Of a stretch of DNA of 64,000 bases, positions 26,980-63,637 are shown in pieces. The stretch lies in IMG/VR virus record IMGVR_UViG_3300033145_003233, positions 124,001-188,000 of that record; one strand, written 5' to 3'. The notes below the pieces were generated by a model, which worked only from the letters and a program-made list of their open reading frames with translations, searched no databases and was not told the DNA's origin. The position numbers and the translations under genes are program-made. The stretch's first letter is position 1. Each line of letters begins with the position of its first letter.

Positions 26980-26980
26980 C

Positions 26981-27432: not shown

Positions 27433-27433
27433 C

Positions 27434-28071: not shown

Positions 28072-28275
28072 TCATTTTTCTCCTCCTAAATCTAAAATAT
28101 CTATTCTACTCTCTATCCCTTCATCGAGAATTTCTTCTATTTTCTCTAATTGAGAAAACTGAACGACTTGGAACTTTTTTTGACAATGATCACAAATCTG
28201 TTCACCTGAGATGTCTTTTACCATTTTAAGTTTCTTATCACAATGAGGGCATATCTTACTATATAAATATTCCAT
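28072..28275 (-). CDS. CxxC protein, tag SRIDILDL
   Basis: CPHC/CDHC; tag. Confidence 0.78.
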   Translation of the reverse strand: MEYLYSKICPHCDKKLKMVKDISGEQICDHCQKKFQVVQFSQLEKIEEILDEGIESRIDILDLGGEK

Positions 28276-30630: not shown

Positions 30631-31092
30631 TTATATGAGCATCTCCTGTAACTGCTGTAACCGTAAGTAGAACCCCCTGCAATGTATGGAGTCTATACCG
30701 AACCATGCCGTGTCAAGGTGGTGCATAATCTCATGGAGTAGAGTAGATATAGCCCCTTTGGGAGTTCTTACCTGTCGTCTCTTAGCTGTGAGTCTATATA
30801 CTTCTATCCATGACCTTTTACCCCTTATCCCTCTACTATGATAGACACCTTGAGTTTTTTCTCTCATAGTCTCTTTGCCTCTCTGTTTTTTGTGAGGCTG
30901 TATTCCCTGAAACTTGATAGGAATAGGTAATAAATCAAACCTGTCAAGGATACGGTCGCCCAGGATTTGCAACTGCTCTTCAGTAATAACAGATAGATTC
31001 CTAAATTCGTTATATAATCTCTTAACCAATTCAGAAAATTCTATCTTATCAGGAAGAGTCAATCTATTCGATTTTGTGTAGTTCGTTTCCAT
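30631..31092 (-). CDS. SprT-like zinc metalloprotease-domain protein
   Basis: TLLHEIMHH (HExxH) and downstream HCRGFY. Confidence 0.7.
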   Translation of the reverse strand: METNYTKSNRLTLPDKIEFSELVKRLYNEFRNLSVITEEQLQILGDRILDRFDLLPIPIKFQGIQPHKKQRGKETMREKTQGVYHSRGIRGKRSWIEVYRLTAKRRQVRTPKGAISTLLHEIMHHLDTAWFGIDSIHCRGFYLRLQQLQEMLI

Positions 31093-31230
31093 AATTTATA
31101 GAACCAAAAAACTGCTGGTCTGGAAAATTAAAAGGCTTTTAATTTTCTCCCCCTTATCAGACTACCTATTATCTGTTTTATCTCAACCTGAGCTAATCTG
31201 AGCCGTTCTGAGGCAAATTATAGCAGGTAT

Positions 31231-31527
31231 CTAATCACTTTTCAATATGTCTTTAAGATAAGCAAGGAGGATTTCTCTTGCTGCCTCATGGTCAAAGACT
31301 TCACAATCATTTTCTCCTGCTACAGAGATAACAAAGCAATTTTCATCATCAACGCCGCCTGAGTCGTCTGGAAACGGACGATGGATATGTTTTGCTTTGA
31401 CAGTTCCATAAATTAGAAGTTCATCAGTAGTAGAGATCGAAGTTCCTGTCGCAAAAGACGCTGCTATAGCTGCCTTTTTTAACTCTCCTGCCAATGTCTT
31501 TATTGCTTCTTTTGCTGTTTTGTTCAT
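31231..31527 (-). CDS. hypothetical protein
   Basis: co-oriented ORF. Confidence 0.7.
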   Translation of the reverse strand: MNKTAKEAIKTLAGELKKAAIAASFATGTSISTTDELLIYGTVKAKHIHRPFPDDSGGVDDENCFVISVAGENDCEVFDHEAAREILLAYLKDILKSD

Positions 31528-31736
31528 TTTTTGATTCCCTGTTTTTTCTTTTGTTTGTTTTTAATCCTTCTCATATCAATCGCAAACCGTATTTCGATAT
31601 AAAGATAACAAGCCACCCAAGCTATAATAGTAGCTATAGCAGGCAATGACTTTATGATTATCATGGTTGCAATTACTGTTAATACTACTTCTGAAAAACT
31701 CATTTTTTGATTCCTTATTAGGTTTTCACTTAACAA
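31524..31736 (-). CDS. hypothetical membrane protein
   Basis: hydrophobic segment. Confidence 0.65.
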   Translation of the reverse strand: MLSENLIRNQKMSFSEVVLTVIATMIIIKSLPAIATIIAWVACYLYIEIRFAIDMRRIKNKQKKKQGIKK

Positions 31737-31773
31737 TCTATAGGAAAGAAAAAACGTTGGTCTGGAAAAATAG

Positions 31774-31809
31774 AAAATAGCCTTGCAAGCTGTTTACCTG
31801 CAAGGCTAT
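31774..31809 (-). terminator. intrinsic terminator
   Basis: ATAGCCTTGCA/TGCAAGGCTAT stem then T run. Confidence 0.7.
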
Positions 31810-31824
31810 AGTTCCGTGAAAACC

Positions 31825-32502
31825 TTAGCCCATTTTGTATTGAGCCGTGTTTAGATGTATTCGGGTTATATTGCCGAGCAAATAATCTCTGACAATAATC
31901 GGTTTTTTCAAGCCTTGACGTTCGCCCTCTTTTTTCTTAGGGATAAACGACTTCGCAATTGCAAGGTCTGCGGCTGTGAGTTCGTCGCCCGTATCTTTGT
32001 AACGATAAACGGCGGGTTTCGTTCCCAATATAGCCACTTGCAAATAGTAATTGTGCTGATTGTCTTTGTTGGTATGTTCAACCAAAATTCTTGACAATTT
32101 GCCCGAATAAGGGTCTCTGACATGAGTTCCCCACTGTCGGCTTTTTGCCTTAAACGTCGCGGCTGAGTTTTCTGTCATTTCTTTGACTTCGCCCTCAAAC
32201 TGAGCAAGAATTTCCTCTGACACTCCTGCCTCTAAGCAAGCCTCTCTGACTTCGGCTGTGAGTTCCCTGCCTCTTGCATTGTTGACCATATTGGTATAGG
32301 AAAAACCAACAATACAATTCGTGATGGAGTCTTTGACAACCTGCTTGTGTAGAGGATTTCCCCTTTTGTTCATTTTGAGTTCGGTTGTTGATGACAACTG
32401 AATAAATGTTGTCCCGTTCACTCTGAGCAACCGTTCTCTCAAATCTGCCTGATTGATAACGATTGCAGAGTCTTTTGTTTTTACTGCTGTGATTTCTGCC
32501 AT
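31825..32502 (-). CDS. phage hypothetical protein
   Basis: 225 aa ORF with AAGGA RBS. Confidence 0.8.
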   Translation of the reverse strand: MAEITAVKTKDSAIVINQADLRERLLRVNGTTFIQLSSTTELKMNKRGNPLHKQVVKDSITNCIVGFSYTNMVNNARGRELTAEVREACLEAGVSEEILAQFEGEVKEMTENSAATFKAKSRQWGTHVRDPYSGKLSRILVEHTNKDNQHNYYLQVAILGTKPAVYRYKDTGDELTAADLAIAKSFIPKKKEGERQGLKKPIIVRDYLLGNITRIHLNTAQYKMG

Positions 32503-32758
32503 TTTTTCATTCCTTAAAAGGTTTTCACTTGGTTCTCACTTACTAATCTATAGAAGCTGAAAATCAAAGGTCTGGAAAATTAAATGATAGTATAATTACT
32601 CATTTTCTTCTTCTTGTTCTTTTCTTCCATATTCTGTCAATATGTTTGTTTATTGCTCTGTTTATCCTATTATCACAGAAAATAGGTATTGGAAAACCTT
32701 TTACACATTGCCAAGCATAGAATTTTATTTGTCCGAATGTTAATTTCATTTCTCTATT

Positions 32759-33238
32759 TTACACTTTTTCATTCATTATGTCAAGCCCTAAATTGGGATA
32801 TTTTGCCTCAAGATACTTTTTCACTCCTGCACTATATACAGTGGTTACTATTCTATAACTACCTTCCTTATCCCCTTTTAGACGATAGACGGTTTGAGTT
32901 TTGCACCATCTTTTCACTTGTGCCTTTTGTTTTTTCCTTGCTTGGTCTTGTTCTACTGCTTCTACAAGGTTTGTAACGAATATATCACAATCCGTATCTA
33001 TTCCTTTGGGCATCATTGTTGACGGTTTTCTTGCTTGTGATAATGTTCTGCAATGGGCATCAAGTTTTTCTTTTTCCCCTTGATTGAGATAGAAGTCAAC
33101 CATGCCACCACCTGCCGTATCTGTTACTGTTCCGATTCTTTTACCATCTAACCACAAAGAGCAGGAAAAGCCATAGCCTTCTCTACCTACGAAACTTTTA
33201 ACTGCTTTTACTGTATATCCCATTATTTTTTTACCCAT
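32759..33238 (-). CDS. hypothetical protein
   Basis: downstream of repeat copy 33279. Confidence 0.8.
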   Translation of the reverse strand: MGKKIMGYTVKAVKSFVGREGYGFSCSLWLDGKRIGTVTDTAGGGMVDFYLNQGEKEKLDAHCRTLSQARKPSTMMPKGIDTDCDIFVTNLVEAVEQDQARKKQKAQVKRWCKTQTVYRLKGDKEGSYRIVTTVYSAGVKKYLEAKYPNLGLDIMNEKV

Positions 33239-33288
33239 TGTCTTATCCTTTTTATTCTATCCCGCAGAAAAATCGTTGGTCTGGAAAA

Positions 33289-33483
33289 TTAGGCATCTAC
33301 CACTTCGACATCGCCAGGGTCAGTACCTAAATCTTCGAGTTCTTCGAGTTCGTCAACTATGATAACCGGGTTTCCTTCTGAGGCAAACTGATGGATATTT
33401 TCAGCATCATCTTCTATAGCTGAGGCATCGTCTGCTAGTTTCATCGCATAATAATTGCCGCTCATTCTTGTTACTCTAAACAT
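33289..33483 (-). CDS. acidic hypothetical protein
   Basis: stop TAA is first triplet of repeat. Confidence 0.7.
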   Translation of the reverse strand: MFRVTRMSGNYYAMKLADDASAIEDDAENIHQFASEGNPVIIVDELEELEDLGTDPGDVEVVDA

Positions 33484-33486
33484 TTT

Positions 33487-33741
33487 TTACTCCATTTCTT
33501 TTTTTAACCTGTTAAAAACTCTTACTGAAATATGACTCCAATGCTCTCCGTTCTCTTCTAGGTCGAATAAAATAGCCACATAGTCTGGATATAACGGTTT
33601 GAATTCAGGATCTAGACAATATCCTACAACATTATGTCGTTTTATCCAAGCTAATAATTTATCATCATCTACAAATACTCCGTTAGGTATATCAGCATTA
33701 TAATTTCCATATCTGAAAGCATTTGGTGGTAATTCTTGCAT
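33487..33741 (-). CDS. hypothetical protein (leaderless-type start)
   Basis: ATG 25 nt after CCAGAC. Confidence 0.75.
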   Translation of the reverse strand: MQELPPNAFRYGNYNADIPNGVFVDDDKLLAWIKRHNVVGYCLDPEFKPLYPDYVAILFDLEENGEHWSHISVRVFNRLKKEME

Positions 33742-33776
33742 AATCTATACAAGCTGTTTTTTGTTTGTCTGGAAAG

Positions 33777-34064
33777 TTAAAACCCACTTTTTCTCCAATC
33801 AACAGTAGGTATTGTAATGCTAGTTATTTTCTTTTCAAAATCGAGGTTTATTTCTAAATCATATAATTCTGACCAATAAGATACATATATGCTTTGTCCA
33901 GATGGAAGAGCTGCTTCAGAATAATGGACCATCTGGAAAACTATTCCTGACATATAAAGAAAGTCTCCATTCTTATATTTTTCTTCTAGTTCTTCTGGAG
34001 TTAAAGCCCTGATATGCTTTATAAAATGTGAGGCTAGTTGTCTGGTTTCAATTATCTTTGCCAT
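33777..34064 (-). CDS. hypothetical protein
   Basis: start trimmed to MAKII; stop in repeat. Confidence 0.7.
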   Translation of the reverse strand: MAKIIETRQLASHFIKHIRALTPEELEEKYKNGDFLYMSGIVFQMVHYSEAALPSGQSIYVSYWSELYDLEINLDFEKKITSITIPTVDWRKSGF

Positions 34065-34300
34065 TAGTTTTCCCTTTGCAACCAATGTTGTCTAGGTCGT
34101 CCTTCTTCTGGTAAATCTCCAAATCCCATTCCTTCTGCTGCTGCTCCGATAAGATTACTATTAACTACTGACCTATCTTTCATTTCTTTTGTAAAACGAG
34201 GTGGAGCACTTCGTCTGCATTGCCAGCATAATTCCGAGACAGAAGTAGTGTCTCTTCCACAACCTAAGCAACAAAATATTGGATCTGGTTTCTTACTCAT
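34064..34300 (-). CDS. CxxC hypothetical protein
   Basis: CLGC/CWQC; ATG 25 nt after repeat. Confidence 0.72.
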   Translation of the reverse strand: MSKKPDPIFCCLGCGRDTTSVSELCWQCRRSAPPRFTKEMKDRSVVNSNLIGAAAEGMGFGDLPEEGRPRQHWLQREN

Positions 34301-34335
34301 AATTTATACCAGTTGAAAATTATTTGTCTGGAAAG

Positions 34336-34704
34336 TTAGCTTCCTACATTCGGCATTGGAAATTGTGTATCCCATTTTCTCTTTCTCACAATATCTAACG
34401 GGTCTAAAAGAACATTGCCATTTTGTGTCCAGACATCAATATCACAAAAAGCAGAAGAGGTTACAAGACCTGCTAATCCTACCCCTTCTAGATGATTAGT
34501 TTCTAATACTACATGAGGTCTGAAAAAACAGTCTCCCCAGACAAACTGATGAATCATCTTCGATCCATATTTGATTTTCGTATCCCTTATTGCCCCAACA
34601 AAAGATACTACTCCTTCATCAGCCTTTTGGACAATCATTCTCAGGGGAATATGTATCCCATTTTCCCCTACCATCATTCTAGTTGCTACATCACTTCCAA
34701 GCAT
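34336..34704 (-). CDS. hypothetical protein
   Basis: between two repeat copies. Confidence 0.75.
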   Translation of the reverse strand: MLGSDVATRMMVGENGIHIPLRMIVQKADEGVVSFVGAIRDTKIKYGSKMIHQFVWGDCFFRPHVVLETNHLEGVGLAGLVTSSAFCDIDVWTQNGNVLLDPLDIVRKRKWDTQFPMPNVGS

Positions 34705-34852
34705 TTTTATTCCCTTTTTATTCTATACTTTTAATTTTTCATTTGTCTGGAAATTTGATGAATTAGGTAATATTACTGGTTCTTCTCTATCTTTTCTAGC
34801 TTGTTGTTCTATTTGTTGTTGAGCTAGTTGTATTTCTTCTTCTGGGGTTAAA

Positions 34853-35110
34853 TTATTCATTTGGAAATTTCTTCTTAACTAGTTTATCTTTGTAACAATC
34901 TTCACAAACAGCCACATGACCTTTTTTAACTAGTTCTTGTGCTCTTTTATCATCATAAAAGCCCTCTTGGTCTATCCATAGGAGTTTCTCAGACTGTTCT
35001 ATCTCACCGCATATATCGCAGCAATTAAGACCCATATCTCCCAGGGCATTTCTTTCCTCATCTGTTATATCTTTAATATTAAGATAGATTAGTTCTTTTC
35101 TAGTTCTCAT
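34853..35110 (-). CDS. CxxC hypothetical protein
   Basis: CDIC/CEDC. Confidence 0.72.
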   Translation of the reverse strand: MRTRKELIYLNIKDITDEERNALGDMGLNCCDICGEIEQSEKLLWIDQEGFYDDKRAQELVKKGHVAVCEDCYKDKLVKKKFPNE

Positions 35111-35113
35111 TAG

Positions 35114-35329
35114 TTACCCCGGATGAATTATTATATCGCTTGTGTGTAATACATATTGGAAAGTAAAATCACAACCACAATTTTCACAATACCCTGATAA
35201 ATACAACATTGTCCTATTGTGTTGTAAAGTAGGACGATTTAAGTGTAGGTGTTTATCTTCTGATTTACAAGAGGGACAATTTCTATCGCCTCTTTCGTCT
35301 CTATAAATTTTTATTTCTCTTAATGCCAT
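35114..35329 (-). CDS. zinc-ribbon hypothetical protein
   Basis: CPSC/CENC; ATG 25 nt after repeat. Confidence 0.72.
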   Translation of the reverse strand: MALREIKIYRDERGDRNCPSCKSEDKHLHLNRPTLQHNRTMLYLSGYCENCGCDFTFQYVLHTSDIIIHPG

Positions 35330-35364
35330 AATCTATAGAAAAGATTTTTCATCTGTCTGGAAAT

Positions 35365-35811
35365 TTAGCCAAACTCATAACAGCCATCATCAATCCATCT
35401 TTTTTTAGGAATTTTCCACTTAATATCAGGATTGCCCATAAAAGCAATTACCATCCAAAACCTAACCCACATTCCCACATACATAGCAACCTCTTGTTGT
35501 TTACTGTCTGGATTAAGCCACAAATCCTCCTGAAAGTGTTCATAGGTATAATTTGTTGAGCCATACCATTTCGGCGCAGTGGGTAAATCTAACACTTCTT
35601 TGATTTTCTCCCAAGGGTATCTGACATCACCTATTTCTTTGATAAAGAATTTAGTAGGATCAAAGCCAATTATTTCTTTACCTGCTTTATAGGCTTTTGT
35701 TAACTCGTGTTCATCTACGTTGGATAGAACAACGATAGTTTCATACCTACCATGTCCATCTCCCCATCTATCGCCAACTGTAAATGATATGATAAAGTCA
35801 TCCGTTTTCAT
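35365..35811 (-). CDS. hypothetical protein
   Basis: stop in repeat. Confidence 0.78.
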   Translation of the reverse strand: MKTDDFIISFTVGDRWGDGHGRYETIVVLSNVDEHELTKAYKAGKEIIGFDPTKFFIKEIGDVRYPWEKIKEVLDLPTAPKWYGSTNYTYEHFQEDLWLNPDSKQQEVAMYVGMWVRFWMVIAFMGNPDIKWKIPKKRWIDDGCYEFG

Positions 35812-36166
35812 AATGGTCTATTGCTCCTTCATCACACTTCTGATTACGAATACAGTCTGAGCATTTCGTGATAGGTGCTTTCCCATAATAAATACAATCT
35901 TCCCAAGTGCAAGTAAACCTCATAGCTTTGTGGATAGACTGAACATCTTTTCTCATCTGTTTTATGTCTTTTTCTATTGTTGATACTCTATCTATGTATT
36001 TATCATAGAATACAAATAGTGTAACAACAAAAACTATTGACCCGCAGAGAGAGACATATAAAAATACGTCTACAGGAATAAATGCGATAGGTAATTCTGG
36101 ACATGAGAAAATAGCTAATAAAAGAACAATAGCAAACCACCATTTATATATTTTATCTAAGCTCAT
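35798..36166 (-). CDS. membrane protein with Cys-rich C-terminus
   Basis: two TM helices; C..C..C..C. Confidence 0.75.
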   Translation of the reverse strand: MSLDKIYKWWFAIVLLLAIFSCPELPIAFIPVDVFLYVSLCGSIVFVVTLFVFYDKYIDRVSTIEKDIKQMRKDVQSIHKAMRFTCTWEDCIYYGKAPITKCSDCIRNQKCDEGAIDHYENG

Positions 36167-36206
36167 ATTTTATCTTATTAAAAAACCTTTTGTCTGGAAA
36201 AATAAT

Positions 36207-36480
36207 GCCGGTTGGTGCCCGTTCTCTTAAGGGAGCGCCAGTTACCCCCGAAAAAGCCACTAGCAAGCACCAACCGGCTCTCTAATCGCGGGAGCATTGC
36301 CCCAGCGAGGTTACAATACGACTCTCCCTGCCGACCCATGCCAGCAGGGAGAGTTTCAACTACCTTACGTTTCCAAACGTTTCCGACATTGCTAAGAAGA
36401 GATTATATCGAAGGCCGATTTAATTGACTACAGCTTGTCAGGGGAAATCGACTAAAAAACCATCAAGCCTGCCGAATCTC
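36207..36480. ncRNA. candidate structured non-coding RNA
   Basis: GC-enriched island with perfect 12-bp (36207-18/36267-78) and 11-bp (36321-31/36344-54) stems. Confidence 0.45.
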
Positions 36481-36618
36481 TAATAATATTCTCTAATCAG
36501 TGTAAGAATTTTCGTTTACCGCATCATAGCCTCCTTTCGAGTCCGTTTGAAGTTTCGATATTAACTTGTTATTTGTTCTCTACTCTTTATTGGGTAAAGA
36601 AATTGATTGTCTGGAAAA

Positions 36619-36786
36619 TTATAAATCTTCTCTGATAACTTCTTCTACTTCTTCTTCAGTGTAACCTGTTGCCTGTGCTATAGCTTCTATATACATTGAA
36701 GCAGAATCAGGTATAGACTTTAACATCCACTTTGCTTGTTTATAATCTTTGTGATCTCTTATTTTTTCTTTGTCAAATTTATCCAT
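36619..36786 (-). CDS. 55 aa hypothetical protein missing from track
   Basis: MDKFDKEK..; GGA RBS; stop in repeat. Confidence 0.65.
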   Translation of the reverse strand: MDKFDKEKIRDHKDYKQAKWMLKSIPDSASMYIEAIAQATGYTEEEVEEVIREDL

Positions 36787-36788
36787 TT

Positions 36789-37109
36789 TTAATCCTTCTC
36801 TCTAGGTTTTCCACGACTTATACCTGCTCCTAACATAGCAGCTTCTTTTTGTGGAGAAGTGCCAAAATCCCAACATGCTCTTGAATCACATTCTTTGATG
36901 AGTTTCTTTATTTGTTCCAAGTTAGATACATTATACTCAACATTAAGCCCTCCCTCAGTAATGTTCGCATATATGTTTAACTTGTCCAGTTTTTTCTGGA
37001 GTTTGACAGCATTAAGATATTTTATTCTAGAGACAAAGATTCTCCTTTGTCTCGCCTCTTCCAATATCTCTATTGCTTTGGGATTGATTTTCTTATCTTT
37101 ATCACTCAT
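36789..37109 (-). CDS. hypothetical protein
   Basis: ATG 25 nt after repeat. Confidence 0.72.
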   Translation of the reverse strand: MSDKDKKINPKAIEILEEARQRRIFVSRIKYLNAVKLQKKLDKLNIYANITEGGLNVEYNVSNLEQIKKLIKECDSRACWDFGTSPQKEAAMLGAGISRGKPREKD

Positions 37110-37287
37110 ATTCTATCCCAGTAATTTTTCTTTTGTCTGGAAAATTAGCAGAGGGGCAAGTTTGAGGGCATAAATAAGAGGTTATTCCTTCTTCTGATAT
37201 TAACACTATCATATACCAGCCTCTTTTACATTTTCCATCTTTGATCTCTTTATATCGGCATTCTTTTTCGGTGTCAAAGGTCTCCAT
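37102..37287 (-). CDS. Cys-containing hypothetical protein
   Basis: reads through repeat copy 37135. Confidence 0.6.
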   Translation of the reverse strand: METFDTEKECRYKEIKDGKCKRGWYMIVLISEEGITSYLCPQTCPSANFPDKRKITGIEYE

Positions 37288-37320
37288 AACCTTTGATTTA
37301 ACTTTTTATTTTATATCCCT

Positions 37321-37575
37321 CTAAATTACTTCAAACCAACTACAAAGAACATTAAAAGAACAATGTCCGCTTGTAAATTCCATACATTCAATGAACATTC
37401 CATTACCTGAACACATCTTTTTAACTAATGTCGATGTCTCATCACTGATATAAACTTTTTCGGTGTGGCCTGCTTTTACTACTTCGGTGTAAGGTGCGGT
37501 GGTATCATCGGCTGATTCATAGATGGTCAGTGTTACATCTTGTCTCCATCTTATTCGCATTTTTCTACCTCCCAA
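37321..37575 (-). CDS. hypothetical protein
   Basis: co-oriented ORF. Confidence 0.7.
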   Translation of the reverse strand: MGGRKMRIRWRQDVTLTIYESADDTTAPYTEVVKAGHTEKVYISDETSTLVKKMCSGNGMFIECMEFTSGHCSFNVLCSWFEVI

Positions 37576-37787
37576 TGATTGATTGCCCCGGAAAATTCTC
37601 TATTCATCATATTACAGATTTCACGGGCAAACTCATAAGAGAATTTTGTAGTTCCGTAATCTTTGAACCCTGTCAATTTTGATTCCCAGTATATCCTATA
37701 CATGGGAGGTTTATTCTCTTTCGCCACCCCGATATTAGTCAACATCAGAACAAATATTACTACAAATATTGCTATAAGCCTTTTCAT
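37551..37787 (-). CDS. hypothetical exported protein
   Basis: signal-peptide-like N-terminus. Confidence 0.7.
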   Translation of the reverse strand: MKRLIAIFVVIFVLMLTNIGVAKENKPPMYRIYWESKLTGFKDYGTTKFSYEFAREICNMMNREFSGAINHWEVEKCE

Positions 37788-37822
37788 ATTCTATCCAATC
37801 ATTTTTTTGTTTGTCTGGAAAA

Positions 37823-38029
37823 TTAATCAGGTTCGACTGTTTCTACAAAACTATACTGCTTGCCACCCTTGTAGGTGTCATTACGAGAGGATATAAGAAC
37901 ATGATGTCCTACATATCTTTTATCCAGAGGATTTATAACCTCATAGATATTATATGGAACATCCATTGCATTAGCATAGGTCTGTGCTCTTTTTCTGGTA
38001 GCTGCTAAGGTAGATATAGTAATACTCAT
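37823..38029 (-). CDS. hypothetical protein
   Basis: stop in repeat. Confidence 0.7.
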   Translation of the reverse strand: MSITISTLAATRKRAQTYANAMDVPYNIYEVINPLDKRYVGHHVLISSRNDTYKGGKQYSFVETVEPD

Positions 38030-38124
38030 TTTTTAACTCCCTTTTCTATTTTCTGAAAAATTTTCATGAATATAAAGACCGTAAGGGGCAACCATATATC
38101 TATATCTTTGATTAACATAATTCA

Positions 38125-38535
38125 TCAAAAGTTTTGTTCTATGTCCTTTTCATGGCAGATATGCTGTATATGGTTATAAATTTCATCAGCTATATCATTT
38201 CCCTGTGCAGGGATAAAATCTTGTTTGAAAACTGTTTTGACAATGACTTCAATAGTTGCAAATATTTCTGTTGAAAGTTCTTCCCAAAAATCGTAATGCT
38301 CTCCACCCTCTCCTTCAATAGTAATATCTTTTTCTGCCTTTATTATTGCATAGTCTAAAACTCTGCTTTTCTTCTCACTATCCGACATAGATTCTTTGTA
38401 GAAGATATGAATAGTCATATCATAAGTGGTTTCTTCTCCAGAACCCTGTATTTCAAATGTAAACTGCTGCTCACACTCTCTAAAAACCGAGTGAACTACA
38501 GCATTACATGTACCTTTTGACAATATTTCTAACAT
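38125..38535 (-). CDS. acidic hypothetical protein
   Basis: GGAG RBS. Confidence 0.75.
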   Translation of the reverse strand: MLEILSKGTCNAVVHSVFRECEQQFTFEIQGSGEETTYDMTIHIFYKESMSDSEKKSRVLDYAIIKAEKDITIEGEGGEHYDFWEELSTEIFATIEVIVKTVFKQDFIPAQGNDIADEIYNHIQHICHEKDIEQNF

Positions 38536-38621
38536 TCTTTTTTCTCCATAATCGAATCACTTGCACACATTATAACATTTTTCTACAATGTATGCAAGTG
38601 ATTTTTCATTTGTCTGGAAAA

Positions 38622-38792
38622 TTAGTTTTTGGGGAGAAACGACTTAATAGCTCTCCAGATGACAAACACCTGTAAGGTAACTATGGGCCAGAGAACCATC
38701 CATTTGGCAGTAAAAACTACCGAGTCAAAAGACACCTGTAAACTCAACAGGTTCTTGAGTAATCCTGCTAATGTAGCTTCTGTTCCGTTCAT
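38622..38792 (-). CDS. 56 aa membrane protein missing from track
   Basis: MNGTEATLAGLL..; stop in repeat. Confidence 0.6.
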   Translation of the reverse strand: MNGTEATLAGLLKNLLSLQVSFDSVVFTAKWMVLWPIVTLQVFVIWRAIKSFLPKN

Positions 38793-38846
38793 TTCATATC
38801 TCCAATATTATATTAAGGTTGACAAGTTAAAAAAGGGAGAGGGGGT

Positions 38847-39077
38847 TCAACCCCCCTTGTTTCCCTTAGCGTTTCCCCAAGTCCACACGCTGTTACCATG
38901 ACCGCCTGTGTAACTGGGACCGGCTGCTCTGCTTTTCCACACTTCATTGTTGTTTTCATCTTTGTAGAAAGACTTCGCACTTGCTCCACCATGAAGGTCC
39001 ACTTGACAACCCGAAAATAGACCTATCAGGAGGAACACACAAATCACTACTGCTACTTCCCATAATCTACTACGCAT
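38847..39077 (-). CDS. putative lipoprotein
   Basis: lipobox-like LFSGC. Confidence 0.65.
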   Translation of the reverse strand: MRSRLWEVAVVICVFLLIGLFSGCQVDLHGGASAKSFYKDENNNEVWKSRAAGPSYTGGHGNSVWTWGNAKGNKGG

Positions 39078-39312
39078 TGTTCTAACTCCTAACTGAGTTA
39101 TTTACTTCCCTGTTATTGCTTTAAGAGCAACAATCTTTGTTACTCAACAGGGGATAGGAAGGAAAAACGACTTGTCTGGAAATATAAATGTAAGTTCCGA
39201 TAAGATAAGGACTTATGTATTTTTGGGGTTAAAGAGAGATTATTATGGGACAAAAAAAGAGAGAGGCCATATCCTTATGGACTCTCTGGGGGGGAGAAAA
39301 AAATAGGTTCTC

Positions 39313-39534
39313 TTACTTAATTAACCAGTTTTCTCTTCTACTTATAGTAATGTCATTCGGTGTTGCAGACATAATAATAAAACCTATTGCATCAGTTTTG
39401 ATCAGTTTTTTCTCCACGTGCTCTTTACCACTCTTATCAAGGATAGTCCAGACAGTTTTCCCTTGCTCTTCTGCAATTTTAGCTTTCTCATACTCCGTTA
39501 TTATATCACACTCTATTGAGAGTTTTGCTTTCAT
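39313..39534 (-). CDS. hypothetical protein
   Basis: co-oriented ORF. Confidence 0.65.
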   Translation of the reverse strand: MKAKLSIECDIITEYEKAKIAEEQGKTVWTILDKSGKEHVEKKLIKTDAIGFIIMSATPNDITISRRENWLIK

Positions 39535-39552
39535 CCCACCTTATTTTTAGCT

Positions 39553-39789
39553 TTATCCCTTCTTTACATTATCATTGGCCCACGAAGGTTCAATCCAACT
39601 TAGTTCTTCACAAGCCCTCTTAACAGACCGACCATCTCGTATGTCTGTAAATGTATCATCCATAATACGTTGTGCCATTTTTTTAAGGAGTTTCTTAGAA
39701 GTTCCAGCGGGCACACGGGTGCAATAAGAAGCATCTTCAACTTGTTCGAAAATTCCATCGGGTTCTGTATATACAGTAAATCTTAACAA
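39553..39789 (-). CDS. hypothetical protein
   Basis: co-oriented ORF. Confidence 0.65.
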   Translation of the reverse strand: MLRFTVYTEPDGIFEQVEDASYCTRVPAGTSKKLLKKMAQRIMDDTFTDIRDGRSVKRACEELSWIEPSWANDNVKKG

Positions 39790-39799
39790 CTTGTCTTTG

Positions 39800-40126
39800 T
39801 CATTGTTTTCCCTCTAATAATATATCCGCATCAATTATATTAGTAAAAAGCACTTCTCCGATTTCAGGAGTAATGATTTCTTTTCTCTCAAAACTAATAT
39901 CAGGAATCATATTGGTGCAATATATATTATAACTCTCATCAGCTTCTGCGTTCAAGTTCATAAAATCGCCACGTTCAACTTTTCTAAATATATCATAGGG
40001 AGAATCTGGACCATAGAAAGTGTTGAGACAATGAATAAAAACATCTTGCGGGGATAAAGAATCATTTATAAAATGATGCCCTATCTCATTATGACCATCC
40101 CAAATTGTAATATACCATACGTTCAT
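39800..40126 (-). CDS. hypothetical protein
   Basis: ATG 25 nt after repeat. Confidence 0.72.
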   Translation of the reverse strand: MNVWYITIWDGHNEIGHHFINDSLSPQDVFIHCLNTFYGPDSPYDIFRKVERGDFMNLNAEADESYNIYCTNMIPDISFERKEIITPEIGEVLFTNIIDADILLEGKQ

Positions 40127-40145
40127 AATCTATCCTAATAAAAAA

Positions 40146-40436
40146 TCACTTGTCTGGAAATAAGTGTTTTATTTCTTCCCAATCATAGAAAGTATCGTTG
40201 ATAGTGATACCTTTTTTATGTTCTCTCATAAAATCTAAGAGGTTAGCAATATCTTCTGAATCATCAGGACGATTTATGAGATGTTGGAGTGTGTCCATAT
40301 CATTTTGTGGGATTTCTTCTTCGGAGATATTTATACTGCCATACTCATAACTATCGAATATATCGACCTCATAATATATTTCACCACTACGAAGATTCTC
40401 AACTTTATTGGCATTAGCATATATTCTATTACTCAT
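40146..40436 (-). CDS. acidic hypothetical protein
   Basis: ends FPDK* inside repeat. Confidence 0.75.
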   Translation of the reverse strand: MSNRIYANANKVENLRSGEIYYEVDIFDSYEYGSINISEEEIPQNDMDTLQHLINRPDDSEDIANLLDFMREHKKGITINDTFYDWEEIKHLFPDK

Positions 40437-40639
40437 TAAATCTCCACATCTGCACCCTTATTAGCATCTAAACAATGGATAGTATCTCTCTCTTCTCTAT
40501 CATTCCCATCATCTTGAAACTTTCTAAGTGCTACGTCTCTTATTTCTTCGGTATCGTACGGGCCATATAAGTTTGGTTCTACACAACCCCACATATGTAA
40601 AAAATAGTATTCTCTTTCTTTTTTCTCTTGTTCTGCCAT
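40436..40639 (-). CDS. hypothetical protein
   Basis: AAGGA RBS after repeat. Confidence 0.72.
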   Translation of the reverse strand: MAEQEKKEREYYFLHMWGCVEPNLYGPYDTEEIRDVALRKFQDDGNDREERDTIHCLDANKGADVEI

Positions 40640-40688
40640 TTTTATATCCTTTTTATTCTATACTAACTATTTTTCATTTATCTGGAAA

Positions 40689-41213
40689 TTAGTCAGGCAA
40701 ATATCCTGCAAGTTCCATTCCGGGTTCATTATATAACCAAGAGATAGAAATGTTAGGAAACAACTCTACCAACTTATTATATATACCAGTTGGAGGACTC
40801 CACGGAGTCATAAAGGAAAAATCAACATCACAATCGTATGCTTTACAGACTACATCACTTGCAGACCATTTTACTCCCCAATTATTTACACACCAGTCAT
40901 ACCAATTAGTAGCTCCATAGTCAGCCAAGAAACGCTTCTCCATTTTTTTAGTCATACCTCTTATAAACCAACTGCCGAGTTTTTTTTCCTCTCTTTCCTC
41001 TTTTGAAGCATTTTTCCACACTTCATATCTTTTTTCTTGTTCCTTAAATTGTGCCTCAGTGATAATATCAACAGGACGAGTAAATCCTTTTAACTCTGGA
41101 GGCAAAGAAAGAATCTTATCGAAGTCAAACTCATCAGTAATTAACTCCATAAGTTTCTTAATATCTTCTTCTGAGCCACTAATTCTTACTGTATTCTCAC
41201 ACCAATTAGGCAA
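40689..41213 (-). CDS. YubB/DUF1281-like ferredoxin-fold protein
   Basis: (M)PNWCEN..WYDWCVNNWGVKW..FMTPWSPP; TTG start. Confidence 0.75.
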   Translation of the reverse strand: MPNWCENTVRISGSEEDIKKLMELITDEFDFDKILSLPPELKGFTRPVDIITEAQFKEQEKRYEVWKNASKEEREEKKLGSWFIRGMTKKMEKRFLADYGATNWYDWCVNNWGVKWSASDVVCKAYDCDVDFSFMTPWSPPTGIYNKLVELFPNISISWLYNEPGMELAGYLPD

Positions 41214-41320
41214 AGCACACCTCACTTTCTTTTTCACTTATATTGGGCATTTTATTAAAAGAAAATAGCATAATAATTAGAATAATATGTAATATAAATT
41301 AACTAATAAGGAATATATCT

Positions 41321-41725
41321 ATGAATAAAAAAGACTTAATTTACTCAGCAGGTTTTATTGACGGAGAAGGCTGTCTTACAACAGGGCATAAATTTGCTTT
41401 TCGTCTTACTATTTCCAGTACGGATAAAAGTATTTTAGAATGGTTACAAAGCAAATTCAAGGGTAACATCAATAATCAATGGCTTCCTAAAAACCCTAAC
41501 CATAATATGGCTTGGAAATGGGTTTTATGTAAGAAATCCGATTTACTCACTTTCTTATTAGCAATTATACCATATCTTAAATTGAAAAAGAGCCAAGCTC
41601 AACTTATAATCAATTATATGAAAACCTATCCTAATCGAAGAAAGAAAAATGAAATCTCTAATCGAGAAATAGATTTTCTAAAAATTAAAGAGCTATTGCG
41701 TTATTTGAAAAATGTTCATTCTTAA
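41321..41725 (+). CDS. single-motif LAGLIDADG homing endonuclease
   Basis: YSAGFIDGEGCL..PYLKLKKSQA; opposite strand to neighbours. Confidence 0.88.
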   Translation: MNKKDLIYSAGFIDGEGCLTTGHKFAFRLTISSTDKSILEWLQSKFKGNINNQWLPKNPNHNMAWKWVLCKKSDLLTFLLAIIPYLKLKKSQAQLIINYMKTYPNRRKKNEISNREIDFLKIKELLRYLKNVHS

Positions 41726-41758
41726 ATTATAGAACTAAAAAATCATTTGTCTGGAAAA

Positions 41759-42190
41759 TTATTCCCAAGTGATGGTTGCAGGTATTTCCTGGCAGGTTTT
41801 ACCATCAAAAATCCATCTCCATAAATAACCATCTTCGCCGCTCATCTCAATAAAACTATCCTTTTTAACAAAGAGTGCAATAGCCTCAAAGAGATGTTCA
41901 TCATTTCCCAACTTTTCTCCCTCAAAGTAGATAGAAGTGATATTGCCATCGCCATCGGTTTCAGGATGCCATCGAAAAGCATCTAAAATATCTTCGATAT
42001 TTTGAGCATTATCAAGTTCTGAGTTATCTACCCAAGAATATGACCTAATACATATATCAAACCCAGATCTACCGCCGCCTACTTTGTCTCTTTCGTCAAG
42101 TAATTTTTTATGAACGTGCTTGAATGCCTCTACCTTTTTATCAGCAGAGAGAAAAAAGTCTTGATCTTTTTGTTCCATACAATAACCCAT
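41759..42190 (-). CDS. phage hypothetical protein
   Basis: start trimmed to MGYC; FEGEKLG..GEDGYLWRW. Confidence 0.78.
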   Translation of the reverse strand: MGYCMEQKDQDFFLSADKKVEAFKHVHKKLLDERDKVGGGRSGFDICIRSYSWVDNSELDNAQNIEDILDAFRWHPETDGDGNITSIYFEGEKLGNDEHLFEAIALFVKKDSFIEMSGEDGYLWRWIFDGKTCQEIPATITWE

Positions 42191-42247
42191 TTTGATATTT
42201 CTCCTTTTTATTCTATAAAAGGAATTTTTCATTTGTCTGGAAAATTC

Positions 42248-42760
42248 TTATTTCGGTGGAACATACTCATAAACTACAACATCAATACCATTCTCAAGCC
42301 ATATTTCCCTGATGAGTTCAAGGATGAAGTCCCAGTTGCCCTTTGCCAAATCACTGCCGAATTTAGGACAATGTATGACAGGTTTCGCATCATTTTGGCC
42401 ATAATTATCCTCGCAAAAGAAACGGACTCTTAACATTGCTTCTGATAAAGCCCAATATTTGACGGGTTTAGGATTATCCTGGTGAACTGTTCCGTGTTGA
42501 CCTATCATATTAACTACAACAATCTGATCCTCATTATTCATTTCTTGAACATGAGCAAAAGAAACAAACCCAAGAGTCAAAGATTGCATTTTATAAACAT
42601 CTTCTACTAAAGGCCATTTCTCTTTCAGTGCAAGTGCTACTCCCTTTCCCATAATCCCGAGATCATTACAGCAATGAGGAATGATTACTACTTCATTCTT
42701 ATTTGTGATCCAGGGGTTTGTTACATCACCCTGTACTACTTTTAGTTTTCCTTGTTCCAT
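42248..42760 (-). CDS. macrodomain protein (ADP-ribose binding/hydrolase)
   Basis: VQGDV..IPHCCNDLGIMGKGVALAL..CPKFGSDLAKGNW. Confidence 0.88.
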   Translation of the reverse strand: MEQGKLKVVQGDVTNPWITNKNEVVIIPHCCNDLGIMGKGVALALKEKWPLVEDVYKMQSLTLGFVSFAHVQEMNNEDQIVVVNMIGQHGTVHQDNPKPVKYWALSEAMLRVRFFCEDNYGQNDAKPVIHCPKFGSDLAKGNWDFILELIREIWLENGIDVVVYEYVPPK

Positions 42761-42929
42761 CTTTTTTCTCCTTTTTCATAAGATAACCATAAGACAATGA
42801 CTTACATCACAATCTTCTTCACAGGTTTCACAATCTTCTGTTGTAGAAACCACTTCATTAGAAAGAACTTCATCTTCATAGATATGAAAAAGACTCATTG
42901 GATAACCACAACGAACTCTTTTGCCTTTT

Positions 42930-43127
42930 TTAGTAATTTATCCTACCCCCACAATTAAGACAATATATGCTATGTAAGCCATGACAAATAACATTGGAAA
43001 AATCGAACATAACAGGTTCTTTACAAACACACATATCTTTATGATTACCAAGTTCTACTCTCTTTTTATGAAGTTCAGCAGTTCTTTGGTTTATTTCTTC
43101 TGCAAATTGTCTTATTCTTACTTTCAT
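42930..43127 (-). CDS. Cys-containing hypothetical protein
   Basis: ATG 25 nt after repeat. Confidence 0.68.
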   Translation of the reverse strand: MKVRIRQFAEEINQRTAELHKKRVELGNHKDMCVCKEPVMFDFSNVICHGLHSIYCLNCGGRINY

Positions 43128-43164
43128 ATTCTACACCACCTAAAAATTATTTGTCTGGAAAAAT

Positions 43165-43194
43165 AAAAAAGAGAGTAGAATTGCTCCTACTCTC
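43165..43194 (-). terminator. intrinsic terminator
   Basis: GAGAGTAG/CTACTCTC stem then T6. Confidence 0.7.
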
Positions 43195-43218
43195 TTAGTT
43201 ACTAAATCGGGGGGTCTC

Positions 43219-44601: not shown

Positions 44602-44654
44602 TAACTTATTTCTCCTTTTTATTCTATATTATCTATTTTCATTTGTCTGGAAAA

Positions 44655-47430: not shown

Positions 47431-47687
47431 TCTCTGCGTCCTTTAATCTTTGGTTTTCTGTCATATGAGATATTGCTTTTATACAAATTTCATCTGTATC
47501 GGCTGGTAATCCTAAATCTTCGAGCATCGCTGCCCAAATTACCTTACTCTTACAATCTTCTTTATATATTGTTCCATTCATTCCACTTTTCCTTATTATA
47601 ACCTATTTTCTACCTTACGTCAAGAAAAAATTACTTGTCTGGAAATTAATAACTTAATCCTTCTTTCACTTTCAAGTGTTATTTAAC

Positions 47688-63107: not shown

Positions 63108-63140
63108 ATTTATATTTCCTTTCTAAAGAACCTATTTTTG

Positions 63141-63272
63141 TAGTCTGGAAAGTTATTTGATAGTTTAATTTTCCAGACTATCGATTTTCTATATCATACT
63201 ACTTTCTAACCAACTTGTCAAGCAAAAAACAGTTGTCTGGAAAGTTATTCGATAGTTTAATTTTCCAGACTA
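63141..63272. repeat. two palindromic copies of the CCAGAC repeat
   Basis: TAGTCTGGAAA-N18-TTTCCAGACTA at 63141-63180 and near-identical copy at 63233-63272. Confidence 0.85.
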
Positions 63273-63637
63273 TTAATTTTTAGATTTAAAATCTATTTTT
63301 ATTTCAAGACAAAAAAGATCCAGTTTATCCATTTCTGTCGATAAACCATTTTTTCTTCCTATTCACTACTCTCTAGTTTTTTTAATCTTTCATTTAAATT
63401 TTCAACATTTTTTCTATTAGTTTGAATGTTACGATCTATTGTGTACAACAATACACCTATTACAACTATCAAAGCAATTCCATAAAATTCCAGCATTTTT
63501 CTTTCTCCTATTGATCTTTCAATTCTCTTATTTTCTTTTGTACATCTCTATGTAATTTTCTCATAAGGAAGAGATGACCACTTATAGCCAACACACATAT
63601 CCCAAAGAACACAACAACTAATATTATCTCATCCTTA

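What the first reader, a model, noticed from the sequence alone, without database searches (positions are those of the whole stretch)
31092..43160. Fixed 25-nt spacing from CCAGAC to ATG: leaderless starts that do not fit sigma70 geometry
Seen: for nine genes (ATG at 31092, 33741, 34300, 35329, 36166, 37109, 37787, 40126, 43127) the start codon follows CCAGAC after 25 nt, directly after TA[GA]AWT-like bases and with no SD. Other copies have the same core followed by AAAAAGG plus an SD-led start. Known: sigma70 initiates about 6-7 nt after the -10 hexamer, which would place the start downstream of these ATGs. Inference: a non-sigma70 (phage-encoded) polymerase or sigma with the AT-rich box adjacent to +1, giving leaderless mRNAs.
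Basis: partly seen in the sequence, partly recalled or inferred. Interest (0 to 1): 0.6.

Follow-up and report, generated by a model that had tools for sequence, protein, structure and literature searches.

The report
Megaphage promoter cassettes abutting start codons
A 548-kb phage marks the front of dozens of small genes with one conserved promoter-like motif whose last box touches the start codon of many of them. This implies either leaderless mRNAs made by an unusual initiation geometry, or ordinary promoters that cannot serve the gene next to them.

Summary
All nine ATGs lie exactly 25 nt after CCAGAC on the minus strand (10 matches against 0.21 expected by shuffling).

The full motif is TAA-w-TTT-CCAGAC-AA, then an A- or T-run, then A-TAnAnT, then a purine. 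The window is part of a 547,943-bp phage record that holds about 45 copies. Metagenomic relatives at 40-78% protein identity keep the same architecture.

The distance from the box to the start codon is 0 (18 copies) or at least 13 nt. It is never 6-12.

Homologues with normal Shine-Dalgarno (SD) starts confirm two of the abutting ATGs as true N-termini. One abutting gene sits directly behind a strong terminator.

In the same genome, three genes behind classical TTGAAA/TATAAT promoters have their ATG 7-8 nt after the -10. The CCAGAC class therefore differs.

No phage RNA polymerase was found. Five sigma-like genes were.

My lean (about 0.5) is a phage-specific promoter whose RNA starts right after the box, giving leaderless mRNAs. 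The main rival (about 0.35) is a canonical sigma promoter starting about 7 nt further on, with these genes translated from read-through transcripts.

No RNA data were available, so the start site is unproven.

The parts
31093..31130 (-). Motif copy (CCAGAC 31118-31123, box TAAATT 31093-31098) abutting the ATG of a 153-aa HExxH protein gene (30631-31092)
   Evidence: Orthologues at 43-78% identity all start at the same Met. Four keep the abutting box. The most distant (L146) uses GGAG-8 nt-ATG instead.
33742..33779 (-). Motif copy (box TAGATT) abutting the ATG of an 84-aa gene (33487-33741). The upstream gene stops at the motif's TAA.
   Evidence: The L153 homologue starts at the same Met with stop/SD coupling. 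This gene is absent from L142 between the same promoter type and the conserved next gene.
34301..34338 (-). Motif copy (box TAAATT) abutting the ATG of a 78-aa Cys-rich gene (34064-34300)
   Evidence: It is an extra gene relative to L142, where the promoter directly precedes the orthologue of 33777-34064.
35330..35367 (-). Motif copy (box TAGATT) abutting the ATG of a 71-aa gene (35114-35329)
36167..36204 (-). Motif copy (box TAAAAT) abutting the ATG of a 122-aa membrane-like protein gene (35798-36166)
37110..37147 (-). Motif copy (box TAGAAT) abutting the ATG of a 106-aa gene (36789-37109)
37788..37825 (-). Motif copy (box TAGAAT) abutting the ATG of a 78-aa gene (37551-37787). Its N-terminus, MKRLIAIFVVIFVLM, looks like a signal peptide.
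40127..40164 (-). Motif copy (box TAGATT) abutting the ATG of a 108-aa gene (39800-40126). The upstream ORF stops at the TGA inside the motif.
43128..43196 (-). Intrinsic terminator (43169-43196, -18.5 kcal/mol, U-tract), then a motif copy (CCAGAC 43153-43158, box TAGAAT 43128-43133) abutting the ATG of a 65-aa gene (42930-43127)
   Evidence: This is the only abutting copy directly behind a strong terminator.
33254..33291 (-). SD-class copy: box TAGAAT followed by AAAAAGGA and an ATG 15 nt after the box (gene start 33238)
34720..34757 (-). SD-class copy: box TAGAAT, then AAAAAGGG, with the ATG at 34704
42210..42247 (-). SD-class copy: box TAGAAT, then AAAAAGGAG, with the ATG at 42190
44621..44657 (-). 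SD-class copy with 18-nt spacing: box TAGAAT, then AAAAAGGAG, with the ATG at 44601
31735..31809 (-). Intrinsic terminator (31777-31809, -24.4 kcal/mol), then a long-leader copy (CCAGAC 31760-31765, box TAGATT) followed by GTTAAGTGAAAACC... and an SD
32545..32582 (-). Long-leader copy (box TAGATT, leader AGTAAGTGAGAACC...) ahead of a 225-aa gene (31825-32502)
   Evidence: The orthologous arrangement occurs in L142.
47595..47649 (-). Motif copy whose downstream part overlaps a classical TTGACG-17-TATAAT promoter
63140..63280 (.). Two 49-nt palindromic units (GTCTGGAAA-N18-TTTCCAGAC), 92 bp apart, flanking a classical TTGACA-17-TATGAT promoter at the head of the leftward gene array

Best explanation
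The element is a phage-specific promoter cassette that heads gene modules in the plastic small-gene and tRNA region of a 548-kb phage.

Its parts are:
- an upstream recognition box, TTTCCAGAC(A/C)A;
- an A- or T-tract;
- 19 bp after CCAGAC, an A-TAnAnT box followed by a purine.

I infer that RNA begins at that purine. Nine genes in the window, whose ATG is that purine plus the next two bases, would then be expressed as leaderless mRNAs. In the other copies the first transcribed bases would be A(A/G)AAAGG (a full Shine-Dalgarno sequence) or a conserved GTTAAGTGAAAACC-type leader.

The upstream box is most likely read by a phage-encoded specificity factor. Candidates are one of the five phage sigma-like proteins or an unidentified DNA-binding activator. 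The factor would act with the host core polymerase, and the palindromic copies at 63.2 kb would serve as operators for it.

Shown: the motif, its spacing, its conservation in relatives, its cassette behaviour and the true N-termini.

Inferred: promoter function, the start site and the identity of the reader protein.
For: - The motif and its spacing are far above chance. They recur in 89 copies across this genome and four diverged relatives.
- The base after the box is a purine in 84 of 89 copies, and in 44 of 44 in the strict set.
- The box-to-start distance is 0 (18 copies), 2, 3 or 5 (one each), never 6-12, and then 13 or more. That is the pattern expected of 5'-UTR lengths measured from a true start site.
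- Two abutting ATGs are authentic N-termini by homology with SD-led orthologues.
- The nine proteins are unrelated to each other, so the junction was not inherited by gene duplication.
- Strong terminators lie directly upstream of about ten copies, which marks them as new transcription units. One is the abutting gene at 43127. Another, in L142, has an SD that begins 3 nt after the box.
- There is no conserved RNA structure, and A-runs and T-runs are interchangeable. Both point to recognition at the DNA level.
- Internal control: three genes behind classical TTGAAA/TTGACA-TATAAT promoters in the same genome have their ATG 7-8 nt after the -10. No CCAGAC-type copy does.
Against: - TAnnnT with invariant T1, A2 and T6, sitting 17-19 bp after a conserved upstream block, is the signature of a sigma70-family -10 element. 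Its start site lies 6-9 nt downstream.
- No phage RNA polymerase was found, so host core polymerase with a sigma is the expected enzyme.
- SD-less starts are common in this genome. Only 223 to 289 of 425 long genes have an SD, so lack of SD does not require a leaderless mRNA.
- Weak SD-like GGA/AGG occurs just before the box in 13 of 19 abutting copies against 6 of 43 others. This would explain why the ATG must follow the 6-nt box at once.
- In relative L153 the leader AAAAAC|AGG places a CA dinucleotide at the canonical seventh position.
- In L155 two abutting genes follow an upstream ORF whose stop codon is the box's own TAA or TAG, which is ordinary translational coupling.
- There are no transcript data.
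Confidence: 0.5

Rival explanations
1. This is an ordinary sigma70-family promoter. Its -35-like block is CAGACA, with the flanks read by a phage sigma or activator. The spacer is 18 bp and the -10 is TAnnnT, so transcription starts about 7 nt after the box.

The abutting genes would not be served by the adjacent promoter. They would be translated from read-through transcripts of upstream promoters in the array. Translation would use a weak SD placed in the free promoter spacer, with the 6-nt box acting as the SD-to-ATG spacer, or SD-independent initiation or stop-start coupling.

The '0 or at least 13 nt' rule then follows because an SD cannot overlap the box.
For: - The TAnnnT pattern and spacing fit.
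- There is no phage polymerase, but there are five sigma genes.
- SD-like triplets are enriched before the box in abutting copies.
- SD-less and coupled starts are frequent genome-wide.
- L155 has junctions of the form stop-3 nt-ATG.
- The conserved A5 run, then GG at +6/+7 or CA at +6/+7, fits an A/T-rich discriminator plus start site.
- Two or three classical promoters in this genome also overlap a start codon.
Against: - It leaves 18 abutting and about 11 short-SD promoters unable to express their adjacent gene.
- About six abutting copies have no SD-like bases yet keep distance 0, among them the HExxH gene in four relatives.
- GGA before the box is about as frequent in SD-class copies, where it cannot act as an SD (4 of 13), so it may simply be a promoter lineage trait.
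- Gene 43127 sits behind a strong terminator.
- No CCAGAC copy shows the canonical leaderless distance of 7-8 nt that classical promoters show here.
Confidence: 0.35
2. The motif acts in RNA. It would be an intercistronic processing or ribosome-loading signal in long polycistronic transcripts, cut just after UAnnnU to release mRNAs that begin at AUG or at the SD.
For: - The distance from CCAGAC to the putative 5' end is fixed.
- The motif is almost always on the coding strand.
- Few terminators separate most cassettes.
Against: - There is no conserved secondary structure.
- A-runs and U-runs would not be equivalent in RNA.
- About ten copies lie directly behind strong terminators, so they would rarely be transcribed from upstream.
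- Palindromic double copies flank a classical promoter, in the manner of DNA operators.
- The TAnnnT pattern is typical of DNA melting elements.
Confidence: 0.07
3. The motif is mainly a recombination linker that shuffles gene cassettes between related phages, and its expression role is secondary. The box-ATG junction would be a frozen product of such exchanges.
For: - Genes are present or absent exactly at motif boundaries between the window and L142.
- The motifs lie in a hyperplastic ORFan region.
- 27 of 62 copies carry stop codons in all three frames, against 5% of random 45-mers.
- There is a precedent in T4-type PeSL cassettes (PMC2839356).
Against: - It does not by itself explain an invariant TAnnnT, the purine after it, or the repeated independent ATG at exactly 0 nt in unrelated genes.
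- It is compatible with, rather than an alternative to, promoter function.
Confidence: 0.08

Closest known systems
PeSL (promoter-early stem-loop) cassettes of T4-type phages (Arbiol et al. 2010, PMC2839356)
   Same: - A conserved intergenic promoter motif repeated in hyperplastic regions full of small ORFans.
- The upstream stop codon lies in an AT-rich part of the motif.
- Some copies carry a terminator stem-loop.
- Gene insertions and deletions between relatives occur at motif boundaries.
   Different: - PeSLs are sigma70-consensus promoters followed by an SD and then the ATG.
- Here the upstream block (TTTCCAGAC) is unlike TTGACA.
- Only about one copy in eight has a stem-loop.
- In 18 copies the start codon touches the -10-like box.
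T4 middle promoters (MotA box at about -30 plus a sigma70 -10 TAnnnT; from established knowledge)
   Same: - A phage-specific box replaces the -35 element, paired with a minimal TAnnnT hexamer.
- They are used for a post-early gene class.
   Different: - No MotA or AsiA homologue is present.
- The box sequence and spacing differ: 17-19 bp here against 12-13 bp.
- T4 middle transcripts start about 7 nt after the hexamer and have leaders.
Classical leaderless genes (lambda cI from PRM; Actinobacteria and Deinococcus genes with TANNNT 6-7 nt before the ATG; from established knowledge)
   Same: - AUG start with no strong SD.
- A promoter lies immediately upstream.
- This genome also has three such canonical cases, with the ATG 7-8 nt after TATAAT.
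   Different: In the CCAGAC class the hexamer ends at -1 rather than -7. Known sigma-holoenzyme geometry does not allow that.
Late promoters of giant phages with non-virion multisubunit polymerases (phiKZ TATG with G as +1; AR9 AACA-N6-T followed by A/G as +1; PMC5312081)
   Same: - The hosts of these promoters are very large phages.
- A short AT-rich element sits directly against +1, with T at -1 and a purine at +1.
   Different: - Those phages encode split beta and beta' subunits, and none is detectable here.
- Their motifs are short and single-block, and their UTRs are long (26-491 nt in AR9).
- Here there is a second conserved block 19 bp upstream, and five sigma genes.
Promoters of single-subunit phage-type polymerases (T7 class; plastid NEP consensus ATAGAATA/GAA next to the start site, recalled from memory and not checked here)
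   Same: An A-TAGAAT-A/G-like sequence lies directly next to the inferred start site.
   Different: - No T7-like polymerase was found (PF00940 gave no candidate; motif search).
- T7-type promoters are one contiguous block of about 23 bp, not a bipartite element reaching -38.

Membership tests
sigma70-family (-35/-10) promoter | Two conserved blocks separated by 16-19 bp | tested here: met
   TAnnnT lies 19 bp after CCAGAC in 63 of 89 copies and at 17-21 bp in all 89. CAGACA-18-TAGAAT is picked up by the consensus scan.
sigma70-family (-35/-10) promoter | -10 hexamer with conserved T1, A2 and T6 | tested here: met
   The hexamer variants TAGAAT, TAGATT, TAAATT, TAAAAT, TAAAGT, TATGAT and TAGGTT all keep T1, A2 and T6. 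Copies were selected on this pattern, but the 22-against-0.38 shuffle test shows it is not chance.
sigma70-family (-35/-10) promoter | Transcription starts 6-9 nt after the hexamer | not testable with these tools
   No RNA run was listed. Indirect evidence points the other way: start codons at 0 nt, SD beginning 2-3 nt after the box, and none at 6-12 nt.
Leaderless mRNA gene | The annotated AUG is the true N-terminus | tested here: met
   This holds for 31092 (six homologues, one SD-led) and 33741 (L153 homologue). The other seven are untested.
Leaderless mRNA gene | No functional Shine-Dalgarno sequence upstream | tested here: inconclusive
   None of the copies has a strong SD. Weak GGA/AGG/GGT occurs 6-8 nt upstream in 13 of 19 copies, and 6 have none.
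Leaderless mRNA gene | The RNA 5' end lies at or within a few nt of the AUG | not testable with these tools
   This needs 5'-end mapping, and no runs were available.
PeSL-type mobile promoter cassette | A repeated conserved promoter motif flanks ORFans in a plastic region, with gene gain or loss at the motifs | tested here: met
   There are 28 motif-context copies in window 31-63 kb. None of the nine abutting genes has a PHROG family. Two or three extra genes sit at motif boundaries relative to L142.
PeSL-type mobile promoter cassette | An integral stem-loop terminator in the cassette | tested here: inconclusive
   Strong hairpin plus U-tract occurs in about 10 of about 90 copies. Most copies have none.
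Promoter of a phage-encoded RNA polymerase (T7-type, N4-type or phiKZ-type) | The genome encodes such a polymerase | tested here: not met
   PF00940, PF00562, PF00623 and PF04997 gave no match. The PF00940 control was silent, so that negative is weaker. No DxDGD or T7 motif set was found. The large ORFs are tail-like or metabolic, or give no family match. A very divergent enzyme cannot be excluded.
T4 middle (MotA/AsiA) promoter | MotA and AsiA homologues are present | tested here: not met
   PF09158 and PF09010 gave no match.

The most novel reading that the evidence does not exclude
A previously unknown mode of transcription initiation in a huge phage. A specificity factor (an atypical sigma-like protein or an unrecognised polymerase) would read TTTCCAGAC and place +1 directly after a TAnnnT box 25 bp downstream. 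The result would be a programmed set of leaderless mRNAs alongside SD-led ones from the same promoter family.
Probability: 0.4. Interest if true: 0.8.

Novelty: new variant of a known kind. Interest (0 to 1): 0.6.

Why it matters
If the RNA really starts at the box edge, this phage family uses a promoter geometry that no known bacterial sigma factor allows. That would imply an unrecognised initiation factor or polymerase in a 548-kb genome that is mostly ORFans. It would also imply a deliberate use of leaderless translation, possibly to escape or reshape host translation control.

If the start is canonical, the element is still useful. It would be a clean, information-rich promoter and cassette-boundary signal for annotating early or middle genes in a poorly known clade of gut megaphages. 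It would also be a second example, outside T4-type phages, of promoter-mediated gene shuffling.

The question can be tested directly with one 5'-end mapping experiment.

Tried and rejected
**Searches that gave nothing useful**
- Public sequencing runs for window 33201-43200: none listed, so read laying could not be used. An earlier attempt was one base over the size limit.
- Megablast of 31-44 kb against GenBank phages: no match.
- Scan of IMG/VR for AATTTTCCAGACAA: only single, apparently chance hits.
- Relatives of the PARP-like protein in viral contigs: none.
- tblastn of the 281-aa sigma against phages: only distant fragments from human faecal samples.

**Alternative genetic code: rejected.** Coding density is 93% under code 11, there is no suppressor tRNA, and the ORF-poor-looking stretch at 10.7-19.3 kb is simply full of small ORFs.

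**Paralogy of the nine genes as the cause of the fixed spacing: rejected.** There are no pairwise hits among them.

**Conserved RNA structure: none**.

**A hidden canonical -10 at -12 to -7 before the abutting ATGs: rejected.** Positions there are variable. TnnnAT lacks the essential A at its second position.

**A cryptic polymerase in the 1028-aa ORF that has an R-x3-K-x7-FG motif: unsupported.** There was no support from PDB sequences or the Atlas.

**Archaeal-type (TATA/BRE) reading: considered and rejected.** The phage has five sigma genes, and CCAGACAA is not TATA-like.

**Identifying the CCAGAC-binding protein:** Pfam scans of neighbouring genes gave nothing.

Full report
**Context.** The window is bases 124001-188000 of a 547,943-bp IMG/VR virus record with 33.6% GC, rated complete by CheckV. 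The standard code gives 93% coding density, and the 29 tRNAs include no suppressor. Nearly all genes in the window are on the minus strand, and so is the motif.

**Observation.** Every one of the nine ATGs lies exactly 25 nt after a minus-strand CCAGAC and directly after a TAnnnT hexamer. Shuffle controls are decisive:
- CCAGAC: 46 matches against 12 expected.
- CCAGAC-N25-ATG: 10 against 0.21.
- CCAGAC-N19-TAnnnT: 22 against 0.38.

**Anatomy.** I aligned 44 copies (30 in the genome, 14 in a related contig). Numbering is from the base after the box as +1.
- T-38 A-37 A-36 w TTT CCAGAC(-31 to -26) A A.
- A run of five or six T or, interchangeably, A at -20 to -15.
- T-11, then A-7 T-6 A-5 n A-3 w T-1.
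- A purine at +1 (44 of 44; A in 37).

The genome holds about 45 motif-context copies, concentrated at genome 155-188 kb, which is window 31-64 kb.

Three kinds of sequence follow the box:
- ATG directly.
- A(A/G)AAAGG, an extended Shine-Dalgarno sequence, with the ATG 13-19 nt after the box.
- A conserved (A/G)(G/T)TAAGTGAAAACC leader with an SD about 30 nt on.

The motif often supplies the stop codon of the preceding gene: TAA at -38, TGA at -22, or TAG/TAA at -6. These are in three different frames. 27 of 62 copies stop all three frames, against 5% of random 45-mers.

**Relatives.** The 153-aa product of 30631-31092 and the 225-aa product of 31825-32502 have metagenomic homologues at 33-78% identity. 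I read contigs encoding homologues at 40-78% identity.

Their contigs (L142-L146, L152, L153, L155) show the same architecture.
- L142 has 14 copies in 7.4 kb, and six abut an ATG.
- L155, at 40% identity, has three abutting called genes. A fourth copy abuts the ATG of a 16-codon mini-ORF upstream of gene 3829.
- L153 has a variant core, TTTACCAG(A/C), and only SD-class copies.

Pooled, 89 copies carry TAnnnT at 17-21 bp. The next base is A in 48, G in 36 and a pyrimidine in 5. The distance from the box to the called start is:
- 0 nt in 18 copies;
- 2, 3 or 5 nt in one copy each;
- never 6-12 nt;
- 13-19 nt in 14 copies;
- 23-35 nt in 25 copies.

**Are the abutting ATGs real starts?** The nine proteins are unrelated to one another, so the junction is not a duplicated gene head. 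They look like real small proteins: Cys-rich, membrane or signal-peptide types, and one with HExxH.

- For 31092, six homologues align from Met1, with an in-frame indel at residue 4. The most distant one (L146) reaches the same Met through GGAG-8 nt-ATG.
- For 33741, a homologue in L153 starts at the same Met behind a stop codon and a G-rich SD.

These ATGs must therefore be present in mRNA.

**Promoter or RNA element?** Several results point to a DNA-level promoter.
- There is no conserved RNA structure.
- A- and T-tracts are interchangeable.
- Two palindromic double copies flank a classical TTGACA-17-TATGAT promoter at 63140-63280.
- About ten copies sit directly behind strong intrinsic terminators. 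Two are in the window, at 43169-43196 (-18.5 kcal/mol, z -5.3) and 31777-31809 (-24.4 kcal/mol, z -7.1). A terminator followed at once by the motif and a gene is the layout of a new transcription unit.

Cassette behaviour is also clear. Two L142 genes that follow SD-class promoters have orthologues in the window. In the window an extra abutting-class gene (33741, 34300) sits between the same promoter type and the conserved gene. This mirrors the promoter-early stem-loop cassettes of T4-type phages (PMC2839356).

**Where does the RNA start?** This is the crux, and it cannot be measured here because no sequencing run was listed.

*For a start at the box edge:*
- The '0 or at least 13' distance rule.
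- The purine at +1 and T at -1.
- SD-class leaders that begin with the full A(A/G)AAAGG complement of the 16S rRNA tail right after the box.
- The abutting gene 43127 sits behind a strong terminator.
- An L142 copy behind a terminator has an SD that would be cut by a start seven bases on.

There is also an internal control. This genome has a second, classical promoter family, TTGAAAGTGAAAG-N8/9-TATAAT, with about a dozen copies that also occur in relatives. Three genes behind classical promoters, two of them from this family, have their ATG 7-8 nt after TATAAT with no SD, which is the textbook leaderless geometry. They are the 190-aa sigma gene at genome 257664, plus the genes at 222511 and 220929. 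None of the 89 CCAGAC-type copies uses that distance.

*Against a start at the box edge:*
- The TAnnnT pattern at a fixed 17-19 bp from an upstream block is the hallmark of a sigma70-family -10. Known holoenzyme structure puts the start 6-9 nt after it.
- I found no phage polymerase. Pfam beta, beta' and T7-type families gave nothing. Catalytic-motif searches gave nothing convincing. Every ORF of about 700 aa or more that I scanned is tail-like, metabolic or without a family match.
- The phage has five sigma70-family genes: a 281-aa FliA/WhiG-like one, a 240-aa SigH-like one, and three of 190-199 aa. No MotA or AsiA is present.
- Lack of SD is not special here. Only 223 of 425 long genes have an SD at the first start and 289 at any early start, with many coupled starts.
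- SD-like GGA/AGG/GGT lies in the 8 nt before the box in 13 of 19 abutting copies, against 6 of 43 others.

That last point offers a neat alternative reading. An SD would sit in the free promoter spacer and the 6-nt box would serve as the SD-to-ATG spacer. Distance 0 would then be enforced, and 6-12 nt would be impossible.

The alternative has limits. The copies are related by descent. The same GGA is about as common in SD-class copies, where it cannot be an SD (4 of 13). About six abutting copies, among them the HExxH gene in four relatives, have no such bases.

Two further details fit canonical geometry and ordinary coupling.
- L153's AAAAAC|AGG leaders put a CA at the canonical seventh position.
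- In L155 two abutting genes follow ORFs that end at the box's own stop codon.

**Verdict.** The element is very probably a promoter cassette (about 0.9). I lean to RNA starting at the box edge, giving leaderless mRNAs for the nine genes (about 0.5). The canonical-geometry rival is at about 0.35, and RNA processing or a pure recombination role take the rest.

Its interpretation is partly supported: the geometry argument and the leaderless inference stand up as well as sequence alone allows. The proposed phage polymerase was not found. A phage sigma would need an unprecedented register.

**Closest known systems:**
- T4-type PeSL cassettes, for organisation and shuffling.
- T4 middle promoters, for a phage box paired with TAnnnT.
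- Classical leaderless promoters, which are present here as a contrast.
- The start-adjacent promoters of giant-phage non-virion polymerases (PMC5312081).

**Limits.** Start sites, the temporal class and the reader protein are all inferred. Gene calls are my own greedy ORF calls. Copies within a genome are not independent, so the Fisher tests overstate significance. The host is unknown; the SigH- and FliA-like sigmas and strong AAAGGAG sites suggest a low-GC Gram-positive host.

Noticed in passing
window 47675, 57316, 18478, 11693 (minus strand); genome-wide about 12 copies: A second, classical promoter family, TTGAAAGTGAAAG-N8/9-(TG)nTATAAT, often with an A-rich upstream stretch. It is conserved in relatives L153 and L155. 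Outside the window, two of its copies (the 190-aa sigma gene and the gene at genome 220929), plus a related TTGAAAAGTGA copy at genome 222511, have an ATG 7-8 nt after the -10.
   Followed up: partly
window about 11600-11693 (minus strand): Downstream of one TTGAAAGTGAAAG-type promoter lie two GC-rich hairpins and a T-run instead of an ORF start. This is a candidate small non-coding RNA. There was no Rfam hit.
   Followed up: no
window 63140-63280: Two 49-nt palindromic units (GTCTGGAAA-N18-TTTCCAGAC), 92 bp apart, bracket a consensus TTGACA-17-TATGAT promoter ahead of a 228-aa ORFan (62421-63107). They look like operators for whatever protein binds the CCAGAC box.
   Followed up: partly
window 47686-59550 (minus strand): A cluster of 27 tRNA genes, plus a weak 28th at 49398-49474, interspersed with small ORFs and HNH/HTH endonuclease-like genes (58087-58707 on the plus strand; 54889-55458).
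   Followed up: partly
window 936-10708 (minus strand): Twelve tandem paralogous genes of 254-293 aa. Each overlaps the next by 8 nt. They have SD-less starts preceded by a conserved ttggaa-r-ga-y-catcc-tttat-w-a sequence, and no Pfam family.
   Followed up: no
window 22520-29104 (minus strand): A tandem family of about ten paralogues of roughly 135 aa, seen as repeated tblastn hits of one L142 protein. Function is unknown.
   Followed up: no
window 46126-47430 and 44655-46058 (minus strand): A eukaryote-like PARP protein (WGR, PARP regulatory and PARP catalytic domains), next to a LAGLIDADG homing-endonuclease-like gene.
   Followed up: no
window 61838-62449 (minus strand): A 203-aa protein with a sub-threshold match to ribosome modulation factor (PF04957, 23.3 bits against a cut-off of 27.9). 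If real, a ribosome-modifying early protein would bear on SD-less or leaderless translation.
   Followed up: no
window 31703-31740, 32502-32550; L142 and L155 leaders: Conserved leader sequences directly after the box. The window and L142 have (A/G)(G/T)TAAGTGAAAACC, duplicated at 32575. L155 has GTAATGATAAACTTTTTCAGGAGTG. They may be regulatory RNA or operator elements.
   Followed up: no
window 50172, 51462, 54630, 55458, 59380 (upstream of these starts): Another repeated upstream motif in the tRNA region: tcgaatatatagatag ... ttatataggaga before the ATG.
   Followed up: no
whole genome (G000): About a third to a half of long genes lack a recognisable SD, among them the giant tail genes. Many of these start within a few nt of the preceding stop codon. 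A 5139-aa ORF (genome 486468-501887) matches a tape-measure PHROG.
   Followed up: partly
window 30631-31092 (minus strand): A 153-aa protein family with an invariant HExxH motif and a conserved C-terminal SIHC-GFY motif. It may be a small metalloprotease. It is known only from metagenomic relatives of this phage.
   Followed up: partly
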